DNA of 64,000 nt from positions 1 through 64,000 of IMG/VR virus record IMGVR_UViG_3300044796_000657; one strand, given 5' to 3'. Position numbers and translations under genes: made by a program. Positions within the stretch are counted from its first letter, which is position 1. The number at the start of each line of letters is the position of its first letter. Positions 35,058 to 49,457 of this stretch are shown here, piece after piece. Below the pieces are notes generated by a model. It searched no databases, had not been told where the DNA came from, and worked only from the letters and a program-made list of their open reading frames with translations.

Positions 35058-35114
35058 TTAGCCTTCATAGCCGAAGTCCCGTTCGTCGTCGTAGTCGTCG
35101 GGGTCGGGCGGCAT
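35058..35114 (-). CDS. 18-aa acidic micropeptide cassette
   Basis: AAAGGAG SD; MPPDPDDYDDERDFGYEG; between a site and a hairpin. Confidence 0.45.
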   Translation of the reverse strand: MPPDPDDYDDERDFGYEG

Positions 35115-35146
35115 AGTGGTCTCCTTTCATTGTTAAGGTTGTATGG

Positions 35147-35365
35147 TCACTCCAAGAGAGCGGCCAGCAATTCCTCATCGGACAAGTTTTCTGGAACGTC
35201 GGGCGGCAGTCCAAGGCGTTCCCGCTCATCAACAATTTGCTTTTCGTACTGTTTCACCCAGACTTGACGCAATTTACGTTCGTTGTCATTCTTGGCAGAT
35301 GCTAACCGCTGGCGCTCATGACTTAGTCCAAGTTCAAGAGCGTGTAAATGGCTTAGGTCTTTCAT
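35147..35365 (-). CDS. Cassette ORFan (coiled coil)
   Basis: TGA stop inside the site. Confidence 0.75.
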   Translation of the reverse strand: MKDLSHLHALELGLSHERQRLASAKNDNERKLRQVWVKQYEKQIVDERERLGLPPDVPENLSDEELLAALLE

Positions 35366-35383
35366 ACCTATTGGCCTGTATGG

Positions 35384-35617
35384 TCACTTCTTTTTCTTCT
35401 TTTGCGTTTCCATTCGTTTGAGCATTTTGCCAAGCTGGTGAAGATCAACCGGCTTATGCATCCTCAATTCCAGTTTATCGGCGAGTTCACGGGTCGTTAA
35501 CTGCCCATGTTCAGCAGTGATTTCGACAATTAGAGTTTTTATGTGCCCCTCCAAGTCGTACCAACTACTGGACGCTTGGTTACTAATGCCTTCGTTTGGC
35601 TTGTCCGTTTCTTTCAT
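35384..35617 (-). CDS. Cassette ORFan, possible winged-helix
   Basis: HGQLTTRELADKL...QLGKMLKRM; TGA stop inside the site. Confidence 0.7.
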   Translation of the reverse strand: MKETDKPNEGISNQASSSWYDLEGHIKTLIVEITAEHGQLTTRELADKLELRMHKPVDLHQLGKMLKRMETQKKKKK

Positions 35618-35651
35618 GGCTCACCCCCTTGGTAACCATAAGGGTGTATGG

Positions 35652-35927
35652 TCACCCGAAAAGGAGGTGCGTGTGGATGATGTATTCCCGGCGGGTTTCG
35701 TCGGGAAATGTAGTATCGCTGAATTCACCGCTGACGCCGGGCAATTCACCTTCCGGCACTTGATCGCCCTTGAGGAAAGAGAAGCCAGCGTAAACGTCGG
35801 CTTCATAGAGAACACCTTCGAGAATGGAATTCCAACCGGCCCGCAGGTCAGGAGAACAATCCTTGCTCTCCCGGTTGAGCGTGTTCACCCTCTGGATCAA
35901 TCCTTTGACATGAACAGTTTGCCGCAT
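35652..35927 (-). CDS. Cassette ORFan
   Basis: GAGG SD; TGA stop inside the site. Confidence 0.8.
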   Translation of the reverse strand: MRQTVHVKGLIQRVNTLNRESKDCSPDLRAGWNSILEGVLYEADVYAGFSFLKGDQVPEGELPGVSGEFSDTTFPDETRREYIIHTHLLFG

Positions 35928-35942
35928 GGTATCGCCTCTTGG

Positions 35943-36653
35943 TTAACCATTAGCCTGTATGGTCACCTTCTTGTCGTCGTATTCTTTCATGCCTTCGTAT
36001 GTGTCAAGTTCGCTTGCGGCCCGTTCGTTCATTTTGTAGGCGTTGACTTGATCGCCGACGCACGCTAAGAGCCATTCCAAGCGGTTCACCGTGATGCCCG
36101 CAGGAACGAATTGAGGCGGGAACGTCCACGTTCCTTTGATTGCCTCGGCACACGCTTTCAGGAAGATCAAAGCGTAAAGGCTATTGTGCCAACCGTGCGT
36201 ATAAAGCCCGTAGATTTGCGCCGGGGTGTTCGCACCGTGCGCCCATTCCGGTACCGGCGTCCATCGTGTATCATGCTTGGCGGAAAGAGCTACCGATGTT
36301 TCGCCGTGGTGGTTGTAGTAGGTCGGCTTTTTGTCGCTGTATTTGAGTTTGTGGAAGCGTTGGATCGTGTCCGCCTTCGGTTCCTTCGGCCACATTTGAG
36401 AAATGACGGGGTTGCAGCCATTGGCCCGCATATGACGGGCGAGGGCGTGTAGGAATTCTTCGAGGCGTTCGCTGATAAGTAGGCCCGGCGGGGTGTGTTT
36501 CGTCGGGTAATCGCCCATACAATCGGCAAACGCCACTTGCGGGTTAACCGCTTTGTTGGTGTATCCCCAACGATTATCGGGGTGAAGGTCTGACGGGAAG
36601 ATCATAAAGATATGATCCGGGTTCACCAAACTACGGAATTCAATAACGGCCAT
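35943..36653 (-). CDS. Cassette ORFan (236 aa)
   Basis: AGGAG SD; reads through the site and stops at the TAA of GTTAAC. Confidence 0.8.
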   Translation of the reverse strand: MAVIEFRSLVNPDHIFMIFPSDLHPDNRWGYTNKAVNPQVAFADCMGDYPTKHTPPGLLISERLEEFLHALARHMRANGCNPVISQMWPKEPKADTIQRFHKLKYSDKKPTYYNHHGETSVALSAKHDTRWTPVPEWAHGANTPAQIYGLYTHGWHNSLYALIFLKACAEAIKGTWTFPPQFVPAGITVNRLEWLLACVGDQVNAYKMNERAASELDTYEGMKEYDDKKVTIQANG

Positions 36654-36771
36654 GATAAAGACTCCTAGAAGGATGTTAACAACTATCAGGCTGTATGGTC
36701 ACCGAAGATACGCCCCTCGGAACTACCGAGAAGCGTAGGGAATATGCCGGGGGAAGTGGACAAGACATGGA

Positions 36772-37056
36772 TCAAGCGGCGTGGCGTTCGTATTCGGCGG
36801 CTTTGGTCGTGTAGTGCTTACAAAGTTCACGCCAATCGGATACGGGAAACTTCCGCAGGGTCAGAGCGAGAAGAGGGGCATTCTCCTTATCGGCCCGTTG
36901 CGGGCAATTCCGCATATCAAGGGCCGCACGGGTTTCAATGTATAAGATAATGGCGTACTCTTCGTTGCCCTTGTGCTTCTTGATCGTTTGCAGCACGTTC
37001 GTCAAAACGGGCTGACAATTATCAATCAGCATCAAAACGGTTTCGAGGGGTTCCAT
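36772..37056 (-). CDS. Cassette ORFan
   Basis: AAGGA SD + ATG 37056. Confidence 0.75.
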   Translation of the reverse strand: MEPLETVLMLIDNCQPVLTNVLQTIKKHKGNEEYAIILYIETRAALDMRNCPQRADKENAPLLALTLRKFPVSDWRELCKHYTTKAAEYERHAA

Positions 37057-37107
37057 GATCGCAATCCTTTTGAGGTTGATGTTAACAACCATCGGGGTGT
37101 ATGGTCA

Positions 37108-37269
37108 CTAGGACACTTTCAAAGCCTCAATCTTTTCAATCGCCCATTCGAGACCTTGTATCGTGCCTTCATTCTTCCACTTCGCACGATTCCCCGAAAA
37201 ATTGCCAGCGTCGGCCTCTTCTTGACACTGACGCTGCAACTCTTTAAGTTCAGCAAGAATCTTTTCCAT
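37108..37269 (-). CDS. Cassette ORFan (53 aa, not in ORF track)
   Basis: MEKILAELKELQRQ...ALKVS*; the G of TAG is the first G of the site. Confidence 0.7.
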   Translation of the reverse strand: MEKILAELKELQRQCQEEADAGNFSGNRAKWKNEGTIQGLEWAIEKIEALKVS

Positions 37270-37316
37270 GATCGTTTACCCTTGTGGTTGATGTTAACAA
37301 CCATCGGGGTGTATGG

Positions 37317-37577
37317 TCACAACCACTCGCTTGCGAGGGCTTCAACAATCGGCATGTTGATGTACATTCCGTCGTCCGTTTGATAGACACCAGCTTCGCC
37401 CAACAGAACGGGGGAGCTGAACTTGGTGCCATCCTTCCGAAAAATCTGAGCGGAAGGGAAACGACTGTCTGACACTTCAACGAATGCCCGTTTGCCAGCA
37501 CAACGCATGTGCATGCACACTTCGCTGTGAGGCAATTCAACTTCGACCTTTTGGCCGGGAACTACTGGTTGCCGCAT
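37317..37577 (-). CDS. Cassette ORFan
   Basis: GGAG SD; TGA stop inside the site. Confidence 0.8.
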   Translation of the reverse strand: MRQPVVPGQKVEVELPHSEVCMHMRCAGKRAFVEVSDSRFPSAQIFRKDGTKFSSPVLLGEAGVYQTDDGMYINMPIVEALASEWL

Positions 37578-37621
37578 GATCGTTCTCCGTTTTGGAAGTT
37601 AACAACCATCGGCCTGTATGG

Positions 37622-37846
37622 TCACTTGCCAAAAACTTTCTTGTGCCGCTTGGCCTTGGCTTTGCGTGCCCGTTCCTTAGCGGTTCGCTTGCGTTTGCCT
37701 ACACCATTGGCATCGGTAGGCGTTCCCCGTTGCTTGCTGTCAAAACGGGGTGGTCGGCGGCGTTCTACTTCGGGGTGAGGCCAAACGGGCCAGCAAGCCC
37801 CGATAAGAGCGAACACGGGCAAAATGCGGGGATGTCGGGCAATCAC
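37622..37846 (-). CDS. Very basic cassette ORFan
   Basis: GAGGAG SD, GTGA overlap; TGA stop inside the site. Confidence 0.65.
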   Translation of the reverse strand: MIARHPRILPVFALIGACWPVWPHPEVERRRPPRFDSKQRGTPTDANGVGKRKRTAKERARKAKAKRHKKVFGK

Positions 37847-38217
37847 GGTAGCTCCTCTGGCTTCTTGTTACCGTAGTTGAACCAACCTTGAGCCAGAATG
37901 CGGTCGATCAACTTTTTGGCTTGGTAAATGCTGGTAATGTCGCAACCGGCGGCGCAACTCGTCACCAGTTTGCCCGTATCGCCGGACGTTCCGAACAGAT
38001 AGACGGCAGTTTCCCGCACTTTGATGCCACGCAAACCGCCCGTATAAAGTTGCGTGTTGCGGACGATCATACACCCCCGGTGCATGGTGTAAGTCTCACG
38101 CTTGCCGTGCGGCTTGCGGAAAAATACCGGTTCGGCCCGTTCAACGTCAACGATGCTATGATCTTCGTTGACGGTCAACAACCAATCGGCACCTAACATT
38201 TTGAGCGGGATCAGCAT
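37843..38217 (-). CDS. Cassette ORFan
   Basis: GAGGG SD; 124 aa. Confidence 0.8.
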   Translation of the reverse strand: MLIPLKMLGADWLLTVNEDHSIVDVERAEPVFFRKPHGKRETYTMHRGCMIVRNTQLYTGGLRGIKVRETAVYLFGTSGDTGKLVTSCAAGCDITSIYQAKKLIDRILAQGWFNYGNKKPEELP

Positions 38218-38260
38218 CGGTTTACCCTCTTAGTTAACCTTTGCGGTGTATGGTCACAAG

Positions 38261-38332
38261 CAAGCGTGAGACGGGTTAAGTGTCAACCGCTCCCCAACAA
38301 TCGGCCCTCCGATCATTGTTGTCTCACGCTTG
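38261..38332. ncRNA. Candidate structured RNA (three-way junction)
   Basis: CAAGCGTGAGAC/GTCTCACGCTTG closing stem; inner GGTT/AACC and AACAAT-CGG/CCG-ATTGTT stems. Confidence 0.35.
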
Positions 38333-38476
38333 GTACTACTACAAACCCGCCTAAGCGGGTTGTGTAGCCTCCTTATTGGATAGGATCAGTGAGGCCGATG
38401 AACAAGACGGCAAAGAGAACGAGAATTTCCATTGTAAGCCCCTCGGTGTTATACCGTGAGGCTTGTATGGTCACCA

Positions 38477-38839
38477 CTAGGCCGCTGCCTTTTCCTCCTT
38501 TTCCTTGATCGTCATGCCGTGGGCGTTGGCGAAAGCTTGGATCATGTCCCAATAGGCACCGCTGCGCCGACTGATTTGATCCTTCAAGGCGAATGCGGTG
38601 GCGGTCACCTTCTTGGTGTTGAGGCGGGGCATCTCTTCGAGGGTGATGTTCTGCGAAGGCGAGCCAATGGGCATGTATTGAAAATGTGTAGGAAAGTCCG
38701 GGGTCGGTTCGTGCTTGACGCCGGTAAGGCTCAAGATGACGGCTTTCGTGCTTTTCCAGTGCGAGATGTCAACCTTGATCGCATTGCTTTCCGCTTTGCT
38801 TTTGGCCGTGTGGATTGAGGCCAGTTTGATGAACAACAT
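38477..38839 (-). CDS. Cassette ORFan
   Basis: AAGGAG SD; TAG 2 nt before the site. Confidence 0.8.
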   Translation of the reverse strand: MLFIKLASIHTAKSKAESNAIKVDISHWKSTKAVILSLTGVKHEPTPDFPTHFQYMPIGSPSQNITLEEMPRLNTKKVTATAFALKDQISRRSGAYWDMIQAFANAHGMTIKEKEEKAAA

Positions 38840-38886
38840 GATTGCGTCTCCTTGGGATGAATGTTAACAACTATCGGGGTGTATGG

Positions 38887-39072
38887 TCACATTTTGAGAT
38901 AGCGGTAGATCGTCGTTTGACTTTTGCCCATGAGACCAGCAATCTCCTTAACGCTCAAACCTTTTTCTTTCAATGCCTTTGCGGCATGGGCGAGGTCGGC
39001 GGGCGTGCTTTTCTTGTAGGGCGTGCTTTCTGCCATTGCTTGACGCAAAGAATCTTCTTCGGCTTGTGTCAT
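38887..39072 (-). CDS. Small helix-turn-helix DNA-binding protein
   Basis: GLSVKEIAGLMGKSQTTIYRYL; TGA stop inside the site. Confidence 0.8.
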   Translation of the reverse strand: MTQAEEDSLRQAMAESTPYKKSTPADLAHAAKALKEKGLSVKEIAGLMGKSQTTIYRYLKM

Positions 39073-39123
39073 AACAATTCTCCTGTACTGCTAAAACCCC
39101 GCCTTAGCGGGGTTTAGTGGTGT

Positions 39124-39393
39124 TTATTCGCACCATGACGGCAGAAACGTTTCGATGCCCTTGGCGTTCTGCTCGGCTACCAATTCCCGCATTTCGCCGC
39201 AGGTCAAGTAGATCGTCTCCTTGACCTTCACGATATTGAATTGAGACACGCCACGACCGCCCGGAAGGTAATCGTATTCGTGAACTCGGCGAACGATGCG
39301 GTACACGCCATCGTGGAAGTTGATAAGGCTGTTAACCTTTGTGGAACTTCCCAACATTGCGGTTCCCGGCTCTTGTGCGATTGAAACGGCCAT
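39124..39393 (-). CDS. Cassette ORFan
   Basis: AGGGAG SD + ATG 39393. Confidence 0.75.
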   Translation of the reverse strand: MAVSIAQEPGTAMLGSSTKVNSLINFHDGVYRIVRRVHEYDYLPGGRGVSQFNIVKVKETIYLTCGEMRELVAEQNAKGIETFLPSWCE

Positions 39394-39416
39394 GACTTGA
39401 ACTCCCTTGGTGCCAA

Positions 39417-39803
39417 TCAACCTGTATGGTCACCAGTGTTGAACGCCATACCGACACAAACGGCCTCATAGATCAACGCTTGCATGCCGCAGGCGCTCAT
39501 TTCGCTGAAGTCCAAACTATCACGGCCACGCATCTCCAAGGGGTGGCCCCAATGCTTTTTGGCCAACTCTACAACCTTCTCCTGAATGAGACAATGCTTG
39601 ACGAACTGCCAGAGAACATTGGCAAAAACGATATGATCCCCGTTGCGCTCACGTTCGTGTAGCCATTTCTCAAACGCATTCAAGAGCTTTTCATGATTGC
39701 CGTAAAACCGATGGAGAGGCTTCCAGCAATCATAGTGCAACGTTTTGAAGATATTGAAGGCTTCGCTTGCCGTGCCTGTTCCAACAATAGCGGGGCTTTT
39801 CAT
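39417..39803 (-). CDS. Cassette ORFan
   Basis: Reads through the site (GDHTG*). Confidence 0.75.
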   Translation of the reverse strand: MKSPAIVGTGTASEAFNIFKTLHYDCWKPLHRFYGNHEKLLNAFEKWLHERERNGDHIVFANVLWQFVKHCLIQEKVVELAKKHWGHPLEMRGRDSLDFSEMSACGMQALIYEAVCVGMAFNTGDHTG

Positions 39804-39959
39804 GTTAACTCTCACAAGAACGTCAAGGATGGGATAGCCGGTCGCCTCGGATTTCCCCGGTTGGTCTCACCGTTATATCGGGGTCTCTGTCATAGCTCGC
39901 ACTATCCGGCCTTGACAACTATCAGGCTGTATGGTCACCGGCACACTACCTGCACACAT

Positions 39960-39989
39960 AAAAAAAGCCCCGCACACTGGCGGGGCTTT
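39960..39989 (-). terminator. Intrinsic terminator
   Basis: AAAGCCCCGC-ACACTG-GCGGGGCTTT with an A-run on + (U-tail on -). Confidence 0.8.
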
Positions 39990-39992
39990 CGT

Positions 39993-40205
39993 CTACTTAC
40001 GTTGTCGTAGTCTATTTATCAAAATGTCGTACGAGGGTCGTCCCTGCGACCCACAACACAAGTGAGATGTTTTGATGATACGAACGCAGGACTTGCCAAA
40101 GCCGATGATACACGAAACGAATGCGGCAATAATCAACCAATTCGTATAGAACGGGTCAGGACTCAACAGAGTTTGCGGCCACTCTGTGACAACATACTTT
40201 TTCAC
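39993..40205 (-). CDS. Cassette ORFan, membrane protein
   Basis: GAGGAG SD + GTG; one TM. Confidence 0.65.
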   Translation of the reverse strand: MKKYVVTEWPQTLLSPDPFYTNWLIIAAFVSCIIGFGKSCVRIIKTSHLCCGSQGRPSYDILINRLRQRK

Positions 40206-40268
40206 CGTTAATCTCCTCTTGGTATCCATCACCCTGTATGGTCACGTTAATAGTTAACATCGCCCCAC

Positions 40269-40354
40269 GTGACCATACATGCTTTGAAAGAAACGGGATG
40301 AAGTTGGTGATTGTTCTGGGAATTATGTTGACTATTCATAGGATGTATGGTCAC
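40269..40354. repeat. Inverted-pair element copy 3 (86 bp)
   Basis: GTGACCATACA-N5-TGAAAGAAACGG ... GACTATTCA-TAGGA-TGTATGGTCAC. Confidence 0.85.
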
Positions 40355-40435
40355 GGGGTGGGTTGTTAACGACATAAAGGCCGGGAATGCCGAAAGGCAT
40401 TCCCGGCCCTCTTTTGTACCTATCAGGCTGTATGG

Positions 40436-40825
40436 TCACCCGGCGTTGCGGAGGATGTCTTGCATCGTCCAAGGTTCATCGTCGGCGGCGGGCTTGTCGG
40501 GCCGGTTGTCGTATTGCTCTGCGATGTCAGCGCAATTGGCATCGTGGGCGAAGTCGGACGGGGCGAGGTGGCCTAGATAGTCCTCGTTCGTGGTATGGAG
40601 TTTGTTGCGGTGTTCCCATCGCAGCATTGCCGTGCGGTAGTCGGTTTCCGTCTTGCCGAAGTAGTCCCCGCTGGAGAAAGAGATTGCGAACTTGGTAGCG
40701 CCCGCTTGGTAAGTTTGGTTGTGAACCACAAACTCACCTTTGAAGTTTTTGTAAAGGACGATGCGGATCGCCATATCGTTTCCGTTCATCATCCAAGGGC
40801 CAGCCGCAAGATAGAGCCGTTTCAT
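40436..40825 (-). CDS. Cassette ORFan
   Basis: GGAG SD; TGA stop inside the site. Confidence 0.8.
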   Translation of the reverse strand: MKRLYLAAGPWMMNGNDMAIRIVLYKNFKGEFVVHNQTYQAGATKFAISFSSGDYFGKTETDYRTAMLRWEHRNKLHTTNEDYLGHLAPSDFAHDANCADIAEQYDNRPDKPAADDEPWTMQDILRNAG

Positions 40826-40920
40826 TGTCAGGTCTCCGGGGTGAAGTTCTTTACAACTATCGGGGTGTATGGTCACGCTTATGTTAAATGAAAAAACCCG
40901 GCCAGAGGCCGGGCAAACGA

Positions 40921-41262
40921 TCAAGAACCGTTCTTTGCTTCCAATGCTCGGAAGATTAGCAGAGCATCCGAAACGGGCGGGCGTTCGTAGCCACTACACA
41001 ACTCCAGAACTTCTTCCACGCTTGGCGCTTCGTCGTCGTCCATCACTTCGCTTTCATCCCAGAGCATTTCTTGAAGTTCGTGGATTTCAGCCGGGGCCAT
41101 CGTGTTTCCGGCCCGTTCACGCACCAGATCGCCCGGATTGATGAGGATGGAATTTCCGAGTTCTCCACCGTTCCACAATGCGGCGTTGATTTCATCCAAG
41201 TTGCTTGTGGCATACGATAAGATCGCAGCCAGAACAAAACGCTTGCGTTCACTCAGTTTCAT
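40921..41262 (-). CDS. Cassette ORFan
   Basis: GGGGG SD; 113 aa. Confidence 0.8.
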   Translation of the reverse strand: MKLSERKRFVLAAILSYATSNLDEINAALWNGGELGNSILINPGDLVRERAGNTMAPAEIHELQEMLWDESEVMDDDEAPSVEEVLELCSGYERPPVSDALLIFRALEAKNGS

Positions 41263-41281
41263 CGCTTGTTTCCCCCTGTTG

Positions 41282-41479
41282 TTAACCTTCGGGCTGTATG
41301 GTCACCGCTTGGCGTTTCTTCTCAAACTCTCTATCATCATCTTCAACGATGAGACGGTTGATTGTCTTATTGACGTTGCAACCACGCACGCCCATCAAAC
41401 AGACTGACCAATTTCCGCCGTGAACACTCTCACGGATGGAATAGGTTCCGTCGTTCTCTTTAACCCCTTTGTAAAGCAT
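41282..41479 (-). CDS. Cassette ORFan
   Basis: Reads through the site and stops at the TAA of GTTAAC. Confidence 0.7.
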   Translation of the reverse strand: MLYKGVKENDGTYSIRESVHGGNWSVCLMGVRGCNVNKTINRLIVEDDDREFEKKRQAVTIQPEG

Positions 41480-41537
41480 TGAAGCCCCCTTTCTAAACAT
41501 AGGGGTGTATGGTCACGATCATTGCGGTTAACGACAA

Positions 41538-41564
41538 AAGCCCCCGGCAGATCGCCGGGGGCTT
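41538..41564 (-). terminator. Intrinsic terminator after the ParB-like gene
   Basis: AAGCCCCCGGC-AGATC-GCCGGGGGCTT. Confidence 0.8.
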
Positions 41565-41584
41565 AGTCTAGTTGCTTCTGTCAA

Positions 41585-42928
41585 TTACTCGGCGGCGGTC
41601 GTTTCGTCGGTCGTTTCGGTGGTCGTCTTGCTGCCCTTGGAGGCGGCTTTCTTCACTTCGGCGGCGGCGACGGCGGCGGCTTCCTTGGCCTTGTTCGCAA
41701 TCACTTGGTCGAGAGTGATGTATTTTTCACCGCAGCACTTTGCGATGAACTTGCGAACGTTTTCATCACGGGTCAAGTCCCAGATTGCGGGCTTGCCGAA
41801 ACGTTCCTTGACTTCCGGGGAGAGGTCGCTCTTGTCCGTGGCGTAGAACAACTCACGGCTTTGGGCCACGCTCGGCATCTTAACCCGTTCGCCTTGCCCC
41901 GGCGTTCCCTTCGGTGCGGCCACTTCGGCACCCGGCTTGCCGGTCGCACGGGCGGCAGCTTGTTGCTTCGCCAGTTCCTTGACGTGCCGTTCCGCAGCGA
42001 CGACGCCCAAAGTTCCGAGGTGAACCCGTTCTTGCTGATCGGCGGGCAATCGCAAGAGCGTCAGACGGTGCATCACCATCTGTTGCTTGTTCTTCGCCGT
42101 GGCTTCGGCCTTGCCGTAGTATTGTTCGGCGATTTCTTGAGCCGTCATGCCGAATTCGGTTTTAAGGCGGCGGAAGAAGATCGCTTCGTCAATCGGGCTT
42201 TGATCCTTGCGGGAACGGTTTTCGGCGAGAGCGGCCATCAACTCGGTTTTGACATCCTTCCCTTCAACCAGCTCGGCGTCCAAGAGCGGCAAACCGCCCG
42301 TTAAGTCCAACCCGCCGTAGAGGTTCTCCTCCCCTTCTTCCAACGGACGGTAAGCCCAGACTTCTTGAGCCTTGTCGCCCTTGCCTTCCATCTTGATCGC
42401 CTTGGCGTCCCCTTCGCCTTCGTAGACGGCGGCGAGGATCGTGCAGCTCATGGCGTATTGCATCGCCCGGCTGATTGAGCGGCGTGCCCCGAAGATCACG
42501 TTGAACTTGTCGGCAATCGGATCGCCCGCTGCGTCGTAGCAGGGACGTACCCGGATGTTCATCAACTGGCCTTGTTGTTCCAGCGAAGAGATCATTTCCC
42601 ATTGCGAATGGGGATTAGCCGGGGTTTCGGGGTCGTATTCCCGCAGGATGTTAAGCATCGCTGCTTGGCGGGCCGGATCGTCGCAGATGAGTTCACCGAC
42701 AACGCTGGTTTCGTCGGTGTATTCGCTGCCCTTCGGTTGCTTGACGGGCTTATCGCCGGGGAAGGCTTTGAGGCCCAACGGGATGAGAGCGGCGAGAACG
42801 CCCTTCCCACGGCTGTTTTCGGCGTTGCTGTGGATCGCCCGAACGTCGATGTTCCAGTTTTGACGCTTGCTCTTCGTCTTGGCATTGAACGGGGTCGGTT
42901 CGGCGCTGGTCGTGGCTCCGGTCGTCAT
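41585..42928 (-). CDS. ParB/Spo0J/KorB-like protein (447 aa)
   Basis: CAGGAG SD; SSLEQQGQLMNIRV, FGARR (arginine patch), ENRSRKDQSPIDEA, GMTAQEIA..G...V..RL.LLRLP..Q (HTH region). Confidence 0.85.
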   Translation of the reverse strand: MTTGATTSAEPTPFNAKTKSKRQNWNIDVRAIHSNAENSRGKGVLAALIPLGLKAFPGDKPVKQPKGSEYTDETSVVGELICDDPARQAAMLNILREYDPETPANPHSQWEMISSLEQQGQLMNIRVRPCYDAAGDPIADKFNVIFGARRSISRAMQYAMSCTILAAVYEGEGDAKAIKMEGKGDKAQEVWAYRPLEEGEENLYGGLDLTGGLPLLDAELVEGKDVKTELMAALAENRSRKDQSPIDEAIFFRRLKTEFGMTAQEIAEQYYGKAEATAKNKQQMVMHRLTLLRLPADQQERVHLGTLGVVAAERHVKELAKQQAAARATGKPGAEVAAPKGTPGQGERVKMPSVAQSRELFYATDKSDLSPEVKERFGKPAIWDLTRDENVRKFIAKCCGEKYITLDQVIANKAKEAAAVAAAEVKKAASKGSKTTTETTDETTAAE

Positions 42929-43281
42929 ACAAAACTCCTGAAAGAAAAAAGGGTGAAAAACGTTCCCGACATAAAGGATGATAGCATCCAATACCGTCAG
43001 GTCAAGACTCAAACTAACAATTTTCGGGAAATTCCGATTTTATTGTGTCGCATGAGTCCGGGGATTTGATTTCCCCTTACAACCAACCCGCTGTATGGTC
43101 ACCATCATCGGGTCAGTCATTGTTTCAACACTAGCCACCCTGTATGGTCACTTCTCTCTTAAGATTGCGGCCAAACATTAACTTCCTTCAATGTACACTT
43201 TGAAACGCATTAACAGTGTATGGTCACGGCTAAAACTAGGCCAAATAAAAAACCCCGCCAAATAGCGGGGTGTACACTTCA

Positions 43282-43497
43282 CTATTTCCCGAACCCTTCC
43301 ATCCATTGTATTAGATGAGGGTTTTTCAATTCGGACCTATCTTCATCCGTGTCGGCTTTTCCGTCTCTCACCTTCAACTCTTCAATCACTGCCAAAACGG
43401 CAGAAACAAACGCTGGCCCCGTCGCCTGCGAAAGTTCGCCCAGATCAAAAGAGACATCGGCAACATTGCCCCTATCACTCGTTATCGTCAATGTCAT
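43282..43497 (-). CDS. Cassette ORFan
   Basis: 71 aa; terminator hairpin at about 43248-43270. Confidence 0.7.
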   Translation of the reverse strand: MTLTITSDRGNVADVSFDLGELSQATGPAFVSAVLAVIEELKVRDGKADTDEDRSELKNPHLIQWMEGFGK

Positions 43498-43704
43498 AAG
43501 GCACCCTAGTTAAAGAAACAAAGCCCACCAGTGAGGCGGGCTGTATGGTCACTTCTTCTTCGACTTCTTCGGCGGCGGAGACACTCGCTCATCTTCAGAA
43601 CACGCATTGAGGAAATAGCCGGTAAACTTCGTTTCGTTGTGCCAGAATTCGCCGTCACTCGGTTGCTGCGCTGAACAGTTCGCAAAGCTCAATTCACAGT
43701 ATGG

Positions 43705-44139
43705 TCACTCCGGTATCTGTTCCTCAATCACCCATCCATTGATGTCGCCCACAACCTCAACTTGCCAGCGGTTCGGCTTGCCCTCCTTCTTATTAACTTC
43801 CGTTACCTCACGAATCTCACAACCCCGACCCTCAATGTAGGCTACTGCCGATGCCTTCGACCCGCACACTTTCACCGTTCCACTTGGGAAATGAAGAGCC
43901 ACGAACACCGGTACCTTAACACGCTCGCTCCACTCAATCCCATCACCAAACGCCTGCAGCCAATCCCACAAGGCGGCGGGCTTCAAAAGAGGGCTGATCG
44001 TCCGATGCCCCATTGCCGCACTGACCAACGAACGGCGGCGATTATTGCTATCCAACTCAAACATGAGCTGGTTGCCAGTATTGCGGTTCAAACGATCCAC
44101 AACACGCTGTAGATCATCACGACTGAAACGACGGGCCAT
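43705..44139 (-). CDS. Cassette ORFan
   Basis: CAGGAG SD; TGA stop inside a 1-mismatch site. Confidence 0.8.
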   Translation of the reverse strand: MARRFSRDDLQRVVDRLNRNTGNQLMFELDSNNRRRSLVSAAMGHRTISPLLKPAALWDWLQAFGDGIEWSERVKVPVFVALHFPSGTVKVCGSKASAVAYIEGRGCEIREVTEVNKKEGKPNRWQVEVVGDINGWVIEEQIPE

Positions 44140-44257
44140 GACTTGTCTCCTGTTTCGGGCACACTAACTGCACACACCCCTGTATGGTCACCCTAGTACC
44201 ATTAACACCCAATACTGAACAAACGTTCAGTATTGGGCACATTACCTGCACACTTGT

Positions 44258-44548
44258 TTACATTCGGAAGTTGGCAGGCTGAATGGTATAAATCCATTCA
44301 CCATCCATCAAAACTCGCCATTCCCTTTCTTCGGGGAACGGTATTACAACGATGTCTCTCTCGTTGCCCGGTTCATCCATCACACCAAGCCAGTTCCGAA
44401 TGTAAAGCTCCGCTCGCTCCACATTCGGATAAACCCCACCGTTGCCCCCATCATCATCACGCTTAATAACCACAACCATTTCAATGGCATTGGCTTCCGG
44501 CGTCATCGGATGAGAAGTCGGCACATTCAACGTGATTTGAGCGTTCAT
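44258..44548 (-). CDS. Cassette ORFan
   Basis: AAGGAG SD + ATG 44548. Confidence 0.75.
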   Translation of the reverse strand: MNAQITLNVPTSHPMTPEANAIEMVVVIKRDDDGGNGGVYPNVERAELYIRNWLGVMDEPGNERDIVVIPFPEEREWRVLMDGEWIYTIQPANFRM

Positions 44549-44582
44549 CAGTGATCTCCTTAGTACCACAACGCCTGTATGG

Positions 44583-44936
44583 TCACAGTTGGGCCAAAAC
44601 CAAAGCATCTGACCACATGTTGGGCTTCTTTGTCTCAATCTCTTCCATCCAACCCAAAACAACTATCAAATCAGCCGAACGTGTTAACAAACGCCAACGC
44701 CAAGGAATCGGCCCAGATTCATCAACCTCATCACCCGGCATCGCAACCGCATACTTGCCAGATTCCGTCTGCACAATCACGGGACGTAAACTGCTATGGT
44801 TGAGAAGGGTTTTCAAATCTTTCAATGACTCCAATCCCATGCTCGCTAAATCCTTGTCGTCGGCTTTCATTCGCATCCGACAACCATTAAGACAATCATG
44901 AATACGAGCTAAACATTTTTTGATAGCAGGACTCAT
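44583..44936 (-). CDS. Cassette ORFan
   Basis: TGA stop inside the site. Confidence 0.75.
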   Translation of the reverse strand: MSPAIKKCLARIHDCLNGCRMRMKADDKDLASMGLESLKDLKTLLNHSSLRPVIVQTESGKYAVAMPGDEVDESGPIPWRWRLLTRSADLIVVLGWMEEIETKKPNMWSDALVLAQL

Positions 44937-45108
44937 GTTAAACATCCCCCGGCACACTTGCTGCACACTTAGTACGCCCCTAAGCCCGCTTCCCATAGAG
45001 TTTCCTCATAGGGGCGGGCTATCGGGCTAACAACGACAAACAATCCTCTAGGCTGCGCAACCAAAAGGCATTTTTGCCAACCACAAGGGAATTTTATTAT
45101 GTGGCCTT

Positions 45109-45369
45109 TCACCCCGTCGCTTGCTCCCCATGACGCAATGATTGCTCATCACGCCCCGTAATCCTCATCATGCTCTGAATGACATTATCAGGAACTTCCG
45201 ATCCCGATACCTCAATGAACGCCGCCTCTTTCTTCGGCTGGTAAAACCAACGAACACCATCAAACGCAAACTCCCGCATCTGATTCAAGAAATTGTAGCC
45301 CGTAATGACTTCACCAGTCACACTGCCTACATCATCCTTGAACTTAACCAAAAAGCGAGTCTTTGCCAT
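45109..45369 (-). CDS. Hypothetical protein
   Basis: AAGGGG SD. Confidence 0.75.
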   Translation of the reverse strand: MAKTRFLVKFKDDVGSVTGEVITGYNFLNQMREFAFDGVRWFYQPKKEAAFIEVSGSEVPDNVIQSMMRITGRDEQSLRHGEQATG

Positions 45370-45542
45370 GATCGTGTCCCCTTAAGAACAATACTTCAAA
45401 AGATGCCGCCACTTGTAAGGCAAGAAAGCCTTCGGCAAATAAGGCTCCCTCATCTTGAAACTCGCCAAACCACGACGAATTCCCGGCTCTACTCTGTATG
45501 TCAAGTGATGTCCCCCTGATAACCACAAGGCTGTATGGTCAC

Positions 45543-45782
45543 TCAGCCCCAAGCATACATCAAACATTCTGACCAATACGTTTGAACAATCCCCTTGATC
45601 TTAGACGCCTTCACCTTCCGCAATTCTTCCACCGACACTTCCAAAATGCCACGGGACGTATCACGCCGCAAACTCACATACTCCTGCGGGCGATAACCCA
45701 AAAGGCTATAAACCTTATCACGCCCTCGATGAGAACCACACTTAACCAGATATTTGCCATCCTTCTCATAAATGCGGGCCAT
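45543..45782 (-). CDS. Cassette ORFan
   Basis: TGA directly abuts the site. Confidence 0.75.
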   Translation of the reverse strand: MARIYEKDGKYLVKCGSHRGRDKVYSLLGYRPQEYVSLRRDTSRGILEVSVEELRKVKASKIKGIVQTYWSECLMYAWG

Positions 45783-45897
45783 GACATTAACCTTGTGTAT
45801 TAGGCGAGAGAAACTACCACTACCGCCACGATTAGATAGCTACTTCGGCTATTAGTCCCTCTCGCCACCAATAACCCTGTATGGTCACCACGCCCCT

Positions 45898-45983
45898 GTG
45901 ACCATACACGCCATGAAAGAAACGGACTAAATGAACTACCACTCCCCACCAATTTGACGACTATTCATAGGATGTATGGTCAC
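45898..45983. repeat. Inverted-pair element copy 4 (86 bp)
   Basis: GTGACCATACA-N5-TGAAAGAAACGG ... GACTATTCA-TAGGA-TGTATGGTCAC. Confidence 0.85.
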
Positions 45984-47377
45984 AACGGGAAAGGTCACGA
46001 AGAAACCCCACGGAGAATCTCGTCTCCGTGGGGTCAACTTGCCGGTGATCGGGCAAAAATAATCAGGACACGGTGGTGAAGCGTTTCATGTTCATTCTCC
46101 TCTTGGCTATGCCCCCGAACTTGGGGCGGGTTTCAGGAAACGGGGAAAGTCTGGGTGATGTTCACAGGTTCGGTATCAGATGCCCATCAGCCTGTATGGT
46201 CACTCGTCTTGGTGTCTACCGGGCCGTTAGTGAGGAGGATCAACTCTGTCATTGGCAACTAGCACGCAGGCGACGATATTGGCGGTCGGCGGCGGCAAGT
46301 ATCAGTTAACCCTCGGAAGCGGCGTTGTCGTCATGGTTGCCGCTGTGATCGGGCCGGTTTTCGGTATCAGGCTAATGGGCATCCTCTGGAAAAAAAGAAG
46401 GAACAAAGCTACGGGAATGGGTTTGGTTTTTTCATGGCGTGGTCTTTCATATAGGTATGGCCCCGGCTTTTGACGCTGCCCACTCAGCACCTAGACACCG
46501 AAAGGGTATCATTAAGGGCCATTTACGGGTGTGGGACATGAGCGACACTAGCCAAAAACAGAACTTCTCGGCAACATGTTATTCTCCGCCGTTGAGGGTG
46601 TTGGGCGTTTCAAATGGGCCGGGATACTACTTCTCGCCTACCTAAGCGGCTCGTTTGTGTCCGGTCAGGCCCGAAGCGAGTTTTTACAATCTAGTCCCGG
46701 TCAGCACGGATGCCTATGCTAATGGAATACCAACCATTAGCACCTTGGCTCCGATGTCTGTTTAGGGAAATCCCGATGTGAACATCGTAGCACCATCCTT
46801 TCATTAGGTTTATACAATTCCGGGCTGCTTAACCATCCTGAATGTTCCCGACGACCCGTGAGGGCTATCTATCTCACGGCACTTACGCACGCCGGGAACT
46901 ACCCAAGATACTACCACGTACTCTTTGGCCTGTCAAGACCATTCTTCACAATTATCACGGTGTATGGTCACTCGCTGAACATCCGTATATCTTCGCTCTC
47001 TTGGCCGTTAACATCCACAACGTGACCATACAGAAAACTTGGCGTTCAACCCTTAGAGATCCATCAGGATTCCAGCCCTTTTTCATACTTTTCATTTTCA
47101 GTGGTGGGCTTGGAATTGACTGCATTGGCCTTTGAAATGGTTTCCGGTGGCAAAATGGTGGGGCGTGCGTTAGAATGTCAGACAGTAGACAAGAGGGGGC
47201 TAGTACCAACCCATAGAGACCCCCTTGACTTTCCCCGTCAATCCCCTACCATATCCTTTATGTACAATACAGTGGTATGCTCTTTAACGGCTTTTTCCTG
47301 TTAAATGGCACTTTGGGCTTGTCTAGGCTTTGGCATTCTGTACGATAGTCTTATGGTGTTAGTGGTGGGGGTTCGGT

Positions 47378-47572
47378 TCAGGCTAATGGGCATCCTCTGG
47401 CTGCGAGTATTAGGAAGGAGGTGATGATGATTAGGCCGACGAGGTGTCTTAGGTAGTTTGGCACTGTGTTTGCTGGTATTGTGCAAACGATAGTGAAGCA
47501 GGCGATCATTGCGATTGCTGCTAGGATTGTGATAGGGTTTTGGCGTATGATGGCCCAGAGTGTATTTTTCAT
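47378..47572 (-). CDS. Small two-TM membrane protein
   Basis: LWAIIRQNPITI...; two hydrophobic segments. Confidence 0.6.
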   Translation of the reverse strand: MKNTLWAIIRQNPITILAAIAMIACFTIVCTIPANTVPNYLRHLVGLIIITSFLILAARGCPLA

Positions 47573-47763
47573 TTTAATTTCTTGACTAGCCATATGAGGC
47601 ATAGGACTGAGAGGATTGTGAGTATGATTGATGCTGGTATTTTGTAGGGGTTGTGGAGTCTGTTAATGGTGACCATGTGTAGGATGAGGGTGACCCATAG
47701 CACGATGAGTGGTGATTTGGCGAAGGCTCTTGTGAGCATCCAGAGTCTAGTTCTTGTGTTCAT
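47569..47763 (-). CDS. Small two-TM membrane protein
   Basis: LWMLTRAFAKSPLIV... Confidence 0.6.
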   Translation of the reverse strand: MNTRTRLWMLTRAFAKSPLIVLWVTLILHMVTINRLHNPYKIPASIILTILSVLCLIWLVKKLK

Positions 47764-47803
47764 TTTCGGCACACTACATGCACAGTTGGCGTGGTGTTGG
47801 GTT

Positions 47804-47983
47804 TTAGCGGATTGTTGCGAGTGTGCCTTCTGCGTTTCTGAGTGTGATGCTGTAGTATCCTTTTGCTGTTGCTTTGAGCCACATTCTTCGGACATGGTTT
47901 TCGTTGCCGGATACAAGTGTAAATCCGGTGCCGTTCATTTCTTCTGCCATTCCGTAGTGGGCGATGATTTGGAACACGTTCAT
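47804..47983 (-). CDS. Hypothetical protein
   Basis: MNVFQIIAHYG...; 59 aa. Confidence 0.6.
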   Translation of the reverse strand: MNVFQIIAHYGMAEEMNGTGFTLVSGNENHVRRMWLKATAKGYYSITLRNAEGTLATIR

Positions 47984-47988
47984 TCTCT

Positions 47989-48213
47989 TTATTTGGTTCG
48001 TTTGGTTTGGTGTATGATTGTGATGATTAGGGTGATTATGCAGAGTGTAGCGATGCACACTGTGGTTATCCGTTGTCTTTCTGTGTATGGCAGTGGTATG
48101 TTAAGCATTGGTTGTAGTGCTAGGAATGACAGGACGAAGTAAGTAGCTGGTTGTTTGAGTGCAAGGTGTGCGAGTAGCCATAGGATGTTTTTGGGTGTAG
48201 GTTTGTATGGCAT
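47989..48213 (-). CDS. Small two-TM membrane protein
   Basis: LWLLAHLALKQPATY...; preceded by motif 2. Confidence 0.65.
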   Translation of the reverse strand: MPYKPTPKNILWLLAHLALKQPATYFVLSFLALQPMLNIPLPYTERQRITTVCIATLCIITLIITIIHQTKRTK

Positions 48214-48255
48214 TTGGTATGTCCTGTATGTTTTGGCACACTAGCTGCACACTTG

Positions 48256-48465
48256 TTAGGCTTTTTTGAGGTTGGCTTCGAGTTTTGCCATTTCGGCGGC
48301 GTGGTGTTTGCCTTGTTTGACACGGGCGTCTGCTATTGTGTGTGCGAGTTCTTTGGCGGCATCGACTTCATCGGGTTTGAGTTCCCCTCGTAGTGCCCGG
48401 TTGACCATGTTAAGTTCATCGGTGGCGAGAACCAGTTGGTATGTCATAAACATGTCAAGTCTCAT
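48256..48465 (-). CDS. Hypothetical protein
   Basis: AAGGA SD. Confidence 0.75.
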   Translation of the reverse strand: MRLDMFMTYQLVLATDELNMVNRALRGELKPDEVDAAKELAHTIADARVKQGKHHAAEMAKLEANLKKA

Positions 48466-48482
48466 TGTATTATTCCTTTTTG

Positions 48483-48893
48483 TTAGTCGTACCATGCTCT
48501 GAGGCAAGTTTCTGTGGATTCGTATTCGTCGGCATTCTTGAACATTGTCTTGAATGCTTTTTGGAGTTTTGGTGAGGCTTTTCCTTGGAGTGATATTTGT
48601 GAGATAGTGATACGGAAGTCGGGTCTTTCTTCCGTAACGACGTATCCATCGCCTTGTAGTTCCGGGTATTCTTCCATGAACTTAACTATTTCGGCGATTG
48701 TGGGGCCGTTGTTTTGTGATTCTTCGGGGTCTAGGAAACCTCTTTCAATGAGCAGTTTGATTGCGTTGAGTTTGAGGCCGTCGAACAGTGCGATACCTCC
48801 TCCGTATTGTGGCGTATCTCTTTGTGTTTCTTCGTGGTTCCATTTGACGCCGTTGGCGGTCATGAGTTCATCACGTTTGGCTTGTCTTTGCAT
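48483..48893 (-). CDS. Hypothetical protein
   Basis: AAGGA SD; ends ...RAWYD. Confidence 0.8.
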   Translation of the reverse strand: MQRQAKRDELMTANGVKWNHEETQRDTPQYGGGIALFDGLKLNAIKLLIERGFLDPEESQNNGPTIAEIVKFMEEYPELQGDGYVVTEERPDFRITISQISLQGKASPKLQKAFKTMFKNADEYESTETCLRAWYD

Positions 48894-48901
48894 TGTATTC
48901 C

Positions 48902-49159
48902 TTAGTGTTTGTAGCGGCTGTAGCTTTGTTGAACGTCTATGTGGATTTTTATTGCGATGTAGATTGCGTAGCTTGTGAAGGTGATTAGTCCCAAGCAAAG
49001 GATCAAGCCTGCTAGTGCTGAGATTTCGTTGGCGGTCTTTTTGGCTTTGGAGAGTTTGGTTATTGCTGCTGTGGTTAGCAGTGTGATGAAACCTATCACT
49101 GTGATAGTGAGTGTCAGGATGAGGTTATTGAGCAGTGTGTTAACTTCGTAGGATGTCAT
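48902..49159 (-). CDS. Two-TM membrane protein
   Basis: Two hydrophobic segments. Confidence 0.7.
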   Translation of the reverse strand: MTSYEVNTLLNNLILTLTITVIGFITLLTTAAITKLSKAKKTANEISALAGLILCLGLITFTSYAIYIAIKIHIDVQQSYSRYKH

Positions 49160-49214
49160 TGTTGTTCTCGTTTGAGGGTTTTGGGGAATTTCCCTTTATG
49201 TTAAGGGTGTATGG

Positions 49215-49457
49215 TCACTGTGATTTGTAGGTTGCTTGTCCTACGTTAAATCCTTTGGCGAAGCCTTCGAGTTTGTGGTTGATTTCCTTGATTTGTTCGG
49301 GTGTGAGTTCGTTGAGTGAGAGAAATGCGATTGCGTATCCCTCTTTGAAGTGTGCGGTGAAGTGTGCACCGCTACTTCTGAATGTTTCGGTGGCGAATTC
49401 GATGAGTGCGTTGGCTTGATTGTAATTCAAGCCTTTGAGTGTGGTTTGGTAATTCAC
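49215..49457 (-). CDS. Cassette ORFan
   Basis: GGAGAG SD + GTG; TGA stop inside the site. Confidence 0.75.
   Translation of the reverse strand: MNYQTTLKGLNYNQANALIEFATETFRSSGAHFTAHFKEGYAIAFLSLNELTPEQIKEINHKLEGFAKGFNVGQATYKSQ

What the first reader, a model, noticed from the sequence alone, without database searches (positions are those of the whole stretch)
41506..43227. ParB/KorB-like protein with three sites upstream: candidate reader of the repeat
Seen: a 447-aa ParB-family ORF (GARR arginine patch, ENxxRxDxSPIDEA, HTH) in the middle of the array. Three sites lie in its ~300-bp upstream region (43092, 43141, 43217) and one lies past its terminator (41506). No parA and no canonical parS palindrome are visible in the window. 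Established: ParB proteins are CTP-dependent clamps loaded at specific sites, and RK2 KorB acts as a global repressor at dispersed operators. Inference: the 11-mer is the loading or operator site, giving autoregulation and silencing, compaction or segregation of the accessory arm. The small HTH at 38887-39072 is an alternative binder.
Basis: partly seen in the sequence, partly recalled or inferred. Interest (0 to 1): 0.78.

Follow-up and report, generated by a model that had tools for sequence, protein, structure and literature searches.

The report
Orphan phage ParB amid oriented junction motif
A giant uncultured phage carries a genuine but partner-less ParB-type DNA clamp gene inside a 100-copy array of an invariant 11-base word that sits, always pointing the same way, just in front of its small genes; the word behaves like a phage-specific gene-start signal rather than a partition site, and whether the ParB protein reads it is open.

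Summary
ORF 41585-42928(-) is a divergent ParB-CTPase+HTH protein by profile and fold. Sites lie at 43092, 43141, 43217 and 41506. GTGACCATACA occurs 69 times in the window (about 1 expected) and 104 times in the 430-kb phage record, 87 on the gene strand. There is no ParA, integrase, repeated palindrome or good parS.

The word does not behave like a centromere. It is asymmetric and co-oriented with genes. It often supplies the upstream gene's TGA stop, ends 25-30 nt before the next start codon, follows terminators by 19-24 nt, and rarely shares a junction with the roughly 20 consensus sigma-70 promoters. My best reading is a phage-specific promoter (0.5).

The ParB link is real at family level. 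Eight further ParB lineages sampled also carry a lineage-specific invariant word; a ninth, more distant one (L153) shows only -10-like words. Most words end in CCC, and one to three copies precede parB wherever its upstream is held, usually with a sigma-70-type promoter. However, the HTH recognition helix does not co-vary with the word, and in one lineage the word lies in both orientations inside ORFs. ParB as direct reader: about 0.3. Binding and transcript ends are untested.

The parts
41585..42928 (-). Orphan ParB-family gene, 447 aa: N-terminal ParB-CTPase-fold domain, an insertion at about residues 165-215, an HTH at about 242-322, and a helical C-terminal region.
   Evidence: Pfam HTH_ParB 1.3e-5. 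PHROG 3264 ParB-like 2.6e-9. The family profile matches Spo0J 1vz0 at 3.4e-18 across the N-domain and HTH. The AF2 model has pLDDT 88, and the Foldseek top hits are ParB-CDP/CTP, Noc, KorB and Spo0J.
42978..43005 (-). Sigma-70-type promoter, TTGACC-16-TATCAT with TG, about 50-77 nt upstream of the parB ATG.
   Evidence: Promoters of 9-10 of 12 also lie upstream of parB in L142, L143, L144, L145 and L147.
43092..43102 (-). Motif copy 1 upstream of parB.
43141..43151 (-). Motif copy 2 upstream of parB.
43217..43227 (-). Motif copy 3 upstream of parB, 24 nt after the terminator of the upstream gene.
43252..43271 (-). Intrinsic terminator of the upstream gene (43282-43497).
41538..41564 (-). Intrinsic terminator of parB (12-pair stem, T tract).
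41506..41516 (-). Motif copy 21 nt after the parB terminator, in front of the next gene (41282-41500).
28702..63968 (-). The part of the motif array inside the window: 67 of the window's 69 copies, 55 of them on the - strand. The array continues to about 137 kb of the record.
38887..39072 (-). Its TGA stop lies inside a motif copy.

Best explanation
The window is the start of a roughly 430-kb uncultured jumbo phage. Its left arm (about 29-137 kb) is a run of small genes on one strand. GTGACCATACA, usually followed by nCC, is most likely the core of a phage-specific promoter: an oriented gene-start signal. It restarts transcription in front of about 100 genes or short operons, alongside a separate set of about 20 host-type sigma-70 promoters.

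The ORF at 41585-42928 is a real orphan ParB-CTPase+HTH protein and a conserved core gene of this phage clade. It has its own sigma-70-type promoter, so it is probably made early by unmodified host polymerase, and it also has three motif copies upstream. It is not part of a ParABS partition system.

Shown: the ParB fold and motifs, the anatomy of the sites, and the co-occurrence of ParB relatives with such arrays. Inferred: that the motif is a promoter, the timing of expression, and any contact between ParB and the motif. The factor that gives the polymerase its specificity is not identified. Candidates are the two sigma-70-family genes at about 144 and 196 kb, or ParB itself.
For: Orientation: 104 exact copies, 87 on the - strand, nearly all between 20 and 135 kb. 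Isolated copies among + strand genes (4988, 21885) are + oriented and lie in front of + strand genes.

Position: in about 40 sites the TGA inside the motif is the stop codon of the upstream gene. The motif end lies mostly 25-30 nt before the next start codon. That matches the 20-31 nt from -10 end to ATG read at two of the phage's consensus sigma-70 promoters. No junction with a gap under 15 nt carries the motif, whereas 19 of 27 junctions with gaps of 30-45 nt do.

Terminators: 4 of 8 strict gene-strand terminators are followed by the motif at +19 to +24 nt, against a chance of 0.047 per position. Four more cases were seen by eye. After these terminators no sigma-70-type promoter was found.

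Exclusivity: 48 junctions have the motif only, 14 have a sigma-70 promoter only, and 2 have both.

Opposite strand: the + oriented copies at 29859 and 40269 are followed by strong + strand terminators, as short transcription units would be.

Not an RNA hairpin: folding is barely better than shuffles, and the downstream GGTT does not change where the word is GTGATC.

Variation: most related lineages keep a C-rich 3' end (..CCC or ..CC) and vary the 5' part. From general knowledge, this resembles the way T7, T3 and SP6 promoters differ.

The same word with CCC faces outward towards the flanking genes in a Gemmataceae element.
Against: No transcript ends are available. The one RNA run holds the region as a single contig at the same depth as the DNA run.

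No dedicated RNA polymerase was found. PF00940 and PF00562 gave nothing, and no DxDGD motif occurs in any ORF of 200 aa or more. The PF00940 control rang nowhere, so that result is weak.

Perfect invariance of 11 nt over 104 sites is unusual for a sigma-dependent promoter. Both phage sigma proteins have region 4, which suggests two-block promoters.

Five tandem + oriented copies at 28763-29023 face the 3' end of a - strand ORF with no + strand gene behind them.

In lineage L147 the word ends only 9-10 nt before the ATG.

In lineage L150 the equivalent word lies in both orientations and inside ORFs. That fits a plain DNA-binding site better than a promoter.
Confidence: 0.5

Rival explanations
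1. The ParB-like protein is the direct reader. It binds the asymmetric word as an operator or loading site and, as a CTP-switched clamp, silences, insulates or activates the arm and regulates itself. The mode would be KorB-, VirB- or Noc-like, without segregation.
For: Eight other ParB lineages sampled (the closest relatives plus P0012) lie in contigs with an invariant lineage-specific word: L008, L142, L143, L144, L146, L147, L148 and L150. ParB is the only protein family shared across these contigs, although they were found through ParB.

Wherever the upstream DNA is held, parB is preceded by a long non-coding stretch with one to three copies, and in six lineages also by a sigma-70-type promoter. 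In L144, L147 and L142 a copy lies about +5 to +15 of that promoter. The G000 clamp-loader promoter has a copy at +3. Those are operator-like positions.

ParB is the only protein-coding gene in the dense 32-46 kb sub-array with a strong (10 of 12) sigma-70-type promoter of its own. The genome has no ParA, no repeated palindrome and no other repeated candidate site. In L150 the word occurs in both orientations and inside ORFs.
Against: The site is asymmetric, whereas ParB, Noc and KorB sites are palindromes (general knowledge; the KorA operator in PMC11790492 is also palindromic).

Strict orientation and fixed spacing to start codons and terminators are not needed for clamp loading.

The recognition helix does not co-vary with the word. 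P0006 and P0010 share EDYQTVRNR, yet their words are GAGAATCAATCaCCC and CTAACCGTAGACCCC. The window protein, P0002 and P0003 differ at four helix positions; the window and P0003 have the identical 11-mer (P0002's word is unknown).

Co-occurrence may only reflect shared ancestry of the phage clade. The helicase gene has four tandem copies, so several copies upstream are not special to parB.
Confidence: 0.3
2. The word is a stoperator-like roadblock or operator read by another small DNA-binding protein, for example the 61-aa HTH at 38887-39072. This would parallel the asymmetric sites of Cluster A mycobacteriophages, which stop elongation in one orientation.
For: The anatomy matches the published description: asymmetric sites, in short intergenic spaces, with orientation correlated with transcription (PMC9283540). 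Copies lie at +3 to +15 of sigma-70 promoters. Modules carry copies in both orientations directly after terminators.
Against: No tyrosine integrase is present (PF00589 none, controls 14 of 14), and no ParA, so there is no sign of a dormant state that would need silencing. Genes that follow strong terminators would then lack any promoter. The 61-aa HTH has no detected homologue in the related 21-kb array L008. No homologue of the stoperator repressor was searched for.
Confidence: 0.08
3. The word acts in the RNA. It would be an intercistronic processing, stability or translation signal recognised in polycistronic early transcripts by a phage RNA-binding protein or nuclease.
For: It lies exactly between the stop codon and the ribosome-binding site, always in the sense strand. 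In L147 it abuts the ribosome-binding site. The CCC after the word is often complementary to the G-rich ribosome-binding site (sequences).
Against: It occurs after strong terminators, where little RNA would exist. Conserved inverted copies and tandem clusters occur in non-coding DNA. There is no hairpin signal and no compensatory change. In L150 it occurs on both strands.
Confidence: 0.08

Closest known systems
Chromosomal and plasmid ParB, Spo0J and Noc (ParB-CTPase + HTH)
   Same: The domain order and motifs match: NxxQxR-like, GQLQNI, GxRR, ENxxR and the HTH. The family profile matches 1vz0 at E 3e-18. The best Foldseek matches are CDP- or CTP-bound ParB and Noc. Like Noc it has no ParA, and it may have many dispersed sites.
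   Different: There is no ParA and no palindromic parS or Noc-binding site. The N-domain carries an insertion of about 50 residues. The position of the catalytic Gln (Q52 in M. xanthus ParB, by alignment) is Asn in this protein. The C-terminal region is distinct. The context is a phage.
KorB (with KorA) of plasmid RK2, a ParB-family global repressor (PMC11790492)
   Same: KorB is a ParB-family CTP clamp that regulates many promoters from dispersed operators. The KorB structure 8qa9 is among the fold matches (TM 0.53 by target). A small HTH protein lies nearby and could play the role of KorA.
   Different: From general knowledge, KorB operators are few (12) and palindromic, and their distance and orientation to promoters vary. 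KorB also works with the ParA homologue IncC. Here there are about 100 asymmetric sites, all oriented with the genes at fixed spacing.
Stoperators of Cluster A mycobacteriophages such as L5 (PMC9283540)
   Same: They are asymmetric sites of about 13 bp, numbering in the tens, in short intergenic spaces, with orientation tied to the direction of transcription. They also occur in promoters.
   Different: Their reader is a monomeric HTH-plus-stoperator-domain repressor of a temperate phage. Here there is no integrase, the sites follow terminators and stand where a -10 element would, and there are four times as many sites, with no degeneracy.
Phage class-specific promoters (T7/T3/SP6 promoter families; the T4 late TATAAATA and middle MotA-box promoters)
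   Same: They are highly conserved oriented words in front of many genes. They occur in tandem arrays at operon heads and in tandem with host-type promoters. Relatives keep a conserved start-proximal part and vary an upstream specificity part.
   Different: This comparison rests on general knowledge, not on a test run here.

Membership tests
ParB/Noc/KorB family (ParB-CTPase fold + HTH) | N-terminal ParB/Srx-fold domain with the GxxR nucleotide-binding motif and ENxxR | tested here: met
   G147 and R150 are invariant and E236, N237 and R240 invariant or nearly so across 65 relatives. The profile matches 1vz0, 7o0n and 7ol9 at 1e-16 to 3e-18 from the N-domain onwards. Foldseek gives probability 1.0 to 7bnk and 6sdk. 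Pfam ParB_N did not reach threshold on this protein alone.
ParB/Noc/KorB family (ParB-CTPase fold + HTH) | ParB-type helix-turn-helix DNA-binding domain | tested here: met
   PF17762 scores 25.7 bits against a cut-off of 22.6. The region aligns to the HTH of Spo0J.
ParB/Noc/KorB family (ParB-CTPase fold + HTH) | CTP binding, hydrolysis and clamp closure | not testable with these tools
   Only the motifs are seen. The Gln position aligned with Q52 is Asn in this protein but Gln in most relatives.
ParABS partition system | Partner ParA (Walker-type ATPase) encoded with ParB | tested here: not met
   PF13614 finds nothing in the 430-kb record, while its controls ring 14 of 14.
ParABS partition system | Palindromic parS centromere site or sites | tested here: not met
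   The best canonical parS match has 2 mismatches and occurs once, at 242578. No palindrome of 12-16 nt recurs more than twice. The repeated word is asymmetric.
KorB-type global regulator | Specific binding of the ParB-family protein to the dispersed operators | not testable with these tools
   Only co-occurrence is seen. The recognition helix does not co-vary with the word.
Stoperator system (Cluster A mycobacteriophages) | Asymmetric sites in short intergenic spaces, oriented with transcription | tested here: met
   The definition is taken from PMC9283540.
Stoperator system (Cluster A mycobacteriophages) | Temperate phage with an immunity repressor of the HTH + stoperator-domain type | tested here: inconclusive
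   No tyrosine integrase was found. The repressor family itself was not searched for.
Phage-specific promoter class | Conserved oriented word at fixed distance upstream of start codons, restarting transcription after terminators | tested here: met
Phage-specific promoter class | A dedicated polymerase or sigma factor that reads it | tested here: inconclusive
   No PF00940, PF00562 or DxDGD motif was found. Two sigma-70-family genes are present, but nothing links them to the word.
Phage-specific promoter class | Primary transcript 5' ends at the word | not testable with these tools
   The only RNA run is uninformative.

The most novel reading that the evidence does not exclude
A ParB-family CTP switch has been recruited in a clade of uncultured jumbo phages as a sequence-specific, orientation-dependent transcription factor, acting as activator or roadblock. 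It would read about 100 asymmetric sites placed at gene junctions. The 5' half of the site would diversify between phage lineages while a C-rich 3' end is kept in most. This would be a Noc- or KorB-like protein turned into the master switch of a phage's accessory arm.
Probability: 0.25. Interest if true: 0.85.

Novelty: new variant of a known kind. Interest (0 to 1): 0.6.

Why it matters
Orphan ParB-CTPase proteins are common on mobile elements, and for most no function or site is known (PMC12704722). Here a whole family of them comes with an obvious, countable candidate site set, and the site varies between lineages. That gives a ready-made specificity series for binding assays.

If ParB reads the word, this would be the first ParB reading an asymmetric, oriented site, and a new way to control about 100 phage genes. 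If it does not, the word is still of interest. It would define a new, unusually strict promoter class in a phage that lacks a recognisable polymerase of its own, which points to an unidentified specificity factor.

Either way, the word gives a simple sequence tag for recognising fragments of this uncultured phage clade. It also gives a possible host clue: a Gemmataceae element carries the same word.

Tried and rejected
RNA evidence: two run searches and one read-laying run found only contigs at DNA-like depth (21.4 against 21), with breaks at repeats and no transcript ends.

Phage database: DNA and protein searches gave no relative. IMG/VR scans with ParB, the 236-aa protein and the clamp-loader alignment also gave none.

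Motif-pair scans: most of the 100 metagenome hits, and 4 of the 5 genome hits, are unrelated tandem repeats that happen to contain the word. The IMG/VR hit L003 is a repeat-rich non-coding end with no ParB relative.

Hairpin or palindrome reading of the word plus the downstream ATnGGTTA: rejected. Folding is barely above shuffles, and there is no compensating change where the word is GTGATC.

Two-block (-35/-10) and MotA-box-like (-30) geometries: rejected. The start site would fall on or after the ribosome-binding site.

Primase-site reading (the complement contains TGGTC, a T7-type primase site, from general knowledge): rejected. The sites are confined to one arm and tied to start codons and terminators.

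Integron-like cassette site: considered, but there are no attC-like imperfect palindromes.

The first structure prediction, from 3 sequences, was unusable (pLDDT 46). The atlas search of the 1953-aa ORF was uninformative.

The upstream regions of the two sigma genes show neither the word nor a strong sigma-70 promoter.

Full report
WHAT IS THERE

The window is the first 64 kb of a 430,229-bp virus record. IMG/VR classes it as a 'provirus' and CheckV estimates it 97% complete. It comes from a peat metagenome. The record carries a large terminase, a DNA polymerase, a clamp loader and helicases. It also has 37 tRNAs and a tmRNA. It is therefore a jumbo phage, and it has no relative in the phage database.

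ORF 41585-42928(-) encodes 447 aa from an ATG behind a GGAG-type ribosome-binding site. On its own the protein hits Pfam HTH_ParB (25.7 bits, cut-off 22.6) and PHROG 3264 'ParB-like'.

A full HMMER search with a 3-sequence profile found 587 relatives at E of 1e-3 or better. A profile of the 12 closest matches Spo0J, ParB and Noc structures at 1e-16 to 3e-18, from the N-domain through the HTH. With 65 relatives as alignment the AlphaFold model reaches pLDDT 88. Its best Foldseek matches are CDP- or CTP-bound ParB, Noc, KorB and Spo0J.

G147 and R150 (the GxRR motif) and N237 are invariant across the family. E236 and R240 (ENxxR), and N35 and R40, are nearly so. At the position aligned with the catalytic Gln, this protein has Asn.

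The record has no ParA, no tyrosine integrase, no good parS and no repeated palindrome. A second, weaker ParB-like ORF lies at about 152 kb. The gene is thus a genuine orphan ParB-CTPase+HTH, a class that PMC12704722 describes as widespread on mobile elements.

THE WORD

GTGACCATACA occurs 69 times in the window against about 1 expected. It occurs 104 times exactly in the record: 87 on the - strand and 17 on the +, nearly all between 20 and 135 kb. No other word in the genome comes close.

The 11 positions are invariant. Downstream there is only nCC and a weak ATnGGTTAAC, and nothing is conserved upstream.

In about 40 copies the TGA inside the word is the stop codon of the upstream gene. The word's end lies mostly 25-30 nt before the next start codon. 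Tightly coupled genes (gap under 15 nt) never have it, whereas 19 of 27 gaps of 30-45 nt do. The isolated copies among + strand genes are + oriented and precede + strand genes.

IS IT A CENTROMERE OR OPERATOR, OR A START SIGNAL?

Several observations favour a directional expression signal.

(i) Four of eight strict gene-strand terminators are followed by the word at +19 to +24 nt, against a chance of 0.047 per position. These include the terminator of parB and that of the gene before it. Four more such cases are visible in the three-copy modules. No sigma-70-type promoter was found after these terminators, so the word is the only conserved candidate to restart transcription.

(ii) The arm also holds about 20 excellent sigma-70 promoters: TTGACA, 16-18 nt, TG, TATAnT, with A/T-rich upstream flanks. 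At two of them read closely, the -10 end lies 20 and 31 nt from the ATG, about the same as for the word.

(iii) The word and sigma-70 promoters rarely share a junction: 48, 14 and 2 junctions have the word only, the promoter only, and both.

(iv) The + oriented copies at 29859 and 40269 are followed by strong + strand terminators. They look like short transcription units.

(v) The hairpin or palindrome idea fails.

Several observations count against the promoter reading. There are no transcript data. No dedicated polymerase is detectable. Total invariance is odd for a sigma-read site. Five + oriented copies at 28763-29023 point into the 3' end of a - strand ORF. In some relatives the word almost touches the start codon.

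THE LINK TO ParB

Only two close relatives exist among 5.8 billion proteins. One of them, P0003 (48% identity), sits in a 21-kb contig of the same build. That contig carries 48 exact copies of the same 11-mer.

More distant family members sit in contigs with other invariant words:

- P0005: GTGATCATACA (L143)
- P0004: catCCATACAg (L142)
- P0006: GAGAATCAATCaCCC (L144)
- P0008: cAATCAAACGCCCTAa (L146)
- P0010: CTAACCGTAGACCCC (L147)
- P0011: CTTTATCAATCGCCT (L148)
- P0012: tcAAAGTCCCTAa (L150)

Most words keep a C-rich 3' end and differ in the 5' part.

Where the upstream DNA is held, parB follows an unusually long non-coding stretch with one to three copies. In six lineages it also follows a sigma-70-type promoter. 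In three of those a copy lies just downstream of that promoter's presumed start.

ParB is the only protein family shared by all these contigs, but they were found through ParB, so this is not an independent test. Independent array fragments found through the word itself (L027, L030, L092, L095; GC 53-62%; genes 42-50% identical to G000 genes) are too short to say whether ParB is present.

Against a direct reading, the recognition helix does not track the word. It is identical in P0006 and P0010 although their words differ. It differs among the window protein, P0002 and P0003; the window and P0003 share the identical word, and P0002's contig DNA could not be read.

For a plain DNA-binding reading, the word in L150 lies in both orientations and inside ORFs. 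A still more distant member (P0033, L153) shows only -10-like words.

HOST CLUE

The same 11-mer plus CCC occurs four times, facing outward, in a short region of a Gemmataceae (Urbifossiella) MAG contig and a near-identical soil contig. That region lies next to a tyrosine recombinase, a RuvB-like ATPase and what appears from its sequence to be an ArdC-like gene. The 7.1-Mb MAG holds only five copies in all. This could be a satellite or remnant that responds to the phage's reader.

VERDICT

A parS or segregation reading is not supported. The word is best read as an oriented, phage-specific gene-start signal (0.5).

A functional tie between this ParB family and such words is suggested by conserved co-occurrence and by the architecture upstream of parB. 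Direct reading by ParB is unproven (about 0.3). Stoperator-like reading by another protein and an RNA-level role remain minor alternatives (about 0.08 each).

Noticed in passing
window 34863-34980; 40235-40354; 45878-45983; 32152-32289 (also L008 about 9181-9408, 11986-12116, 15834-15954): A three-copy module recurs directly after a gene-strand terminator: forward copy, about 60 nt, inverted copy, about 25 nt, forward copy. The inverted copy is followed in its own direction by a conserved TGAAAGAAAC. The architecture is conserved in the 48%-identity relative. At 40269 the inverted copy is followed about 110 nt later by a strong + strand terminator (40379-40408), which suggests an antisense RNA of about 135 nt.
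   Followed up: partly
window 46200-46936 (-): A stretch of about 700 nt has no ORF over 62 aa on the gene strand. It lies downstream of a strong sigma-70-type promoter (TTGACA-17-TAGTAT with TG, 46936-46908). It is a candidate large non-coding RNA, with no Rfam match at gathering score.
   Followed up: partly
window 28702-29023 and 29803-29869: This is the boundary between the + strand left part and the - strand arm. One - copy stands back to back with five tandem + copies, and a perfect 14-bp hairpin lies between the last two (28979-29012). Two more + copies lie just upstream of - strand ORF 29031-29789, followed by a + strand terminator (29881-29912). No + strand gene lies behind them.
   Followed up: partly
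G000 60-137 kb (for example the -35 at 82182; window 60203): About 20 near-consensus sigma-70 promoters with an extended -10 (TG) and A/T-rich upstream flanks lie on the gene strand. One is a perfect TTGACA-17-TATAAT. The host polymerase therefore probably has canonical sigma-70 specificity.
   Followed up: partly
L059 5272-8944; L132 4092-4654: The same 11-mer plus CCC occurs 4-5 times in a GC-rich (64-69%) Gemmataceae (Urbifossiella MAG) element that also carries a tyrosine recombinase, a RuvB-like AAA protein and an apparent ArdC-like gene. The whole 7.1-Mb MAG holds only 5 copies. This may be a host clue, or a satellite-like element that uses the phage's signal.
   Followed up: partly
G000 about 151.9-153.0 kb (L131 562-1749, -): A second, weaker ParB-like ORF (395 aa) hits ParB_N at 8.5e-4 and HTH_ParB at 9.8e-4. 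A lone near-parS, TGTTTCTCTTGAAACA (2 mismatches), lies at G000 242578.
   Followed up: no
L150 667-11520: In the contig of the more distant ParB P0012, the word tcAAAGTCCCTAa occurs 10 times in 11.8 kb. It appears in both orientations and in several reading frames inside ORFs. A sigma-70-family gene lies 2.7 kb from parB.
   Followed up: partly
window 53308-59169 (-): A 1953-aa ORF has no Pfam hit, no match in the phage database and no informative atlas neighbour.
   Followed up: partly
window 27354-28097 (+): Three tandem paralogous genes of about 80 aa (each starting MNLNKL) lie just before the strand switch. An HNH-like zinc-finger ORF is at 28198-28533(-).
   Followed up: no
whole record: The identical ParB protein is also on record on a 614,480-bp contig, while the IMG/VR record is a 430-kb 'provirus' cut. 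No integrase is found, so the cut may have removed phage DNA rather than host DNA.
   Followed up: no
window 11566-11638, 13191-13263: Two tRNA genes (Lys-TTT and Arg-TCT) lie in the + strand left part. The record holds 37 tRNAs and a tmRNA (tag peptide VEPELRMAA).
   Followed up: no
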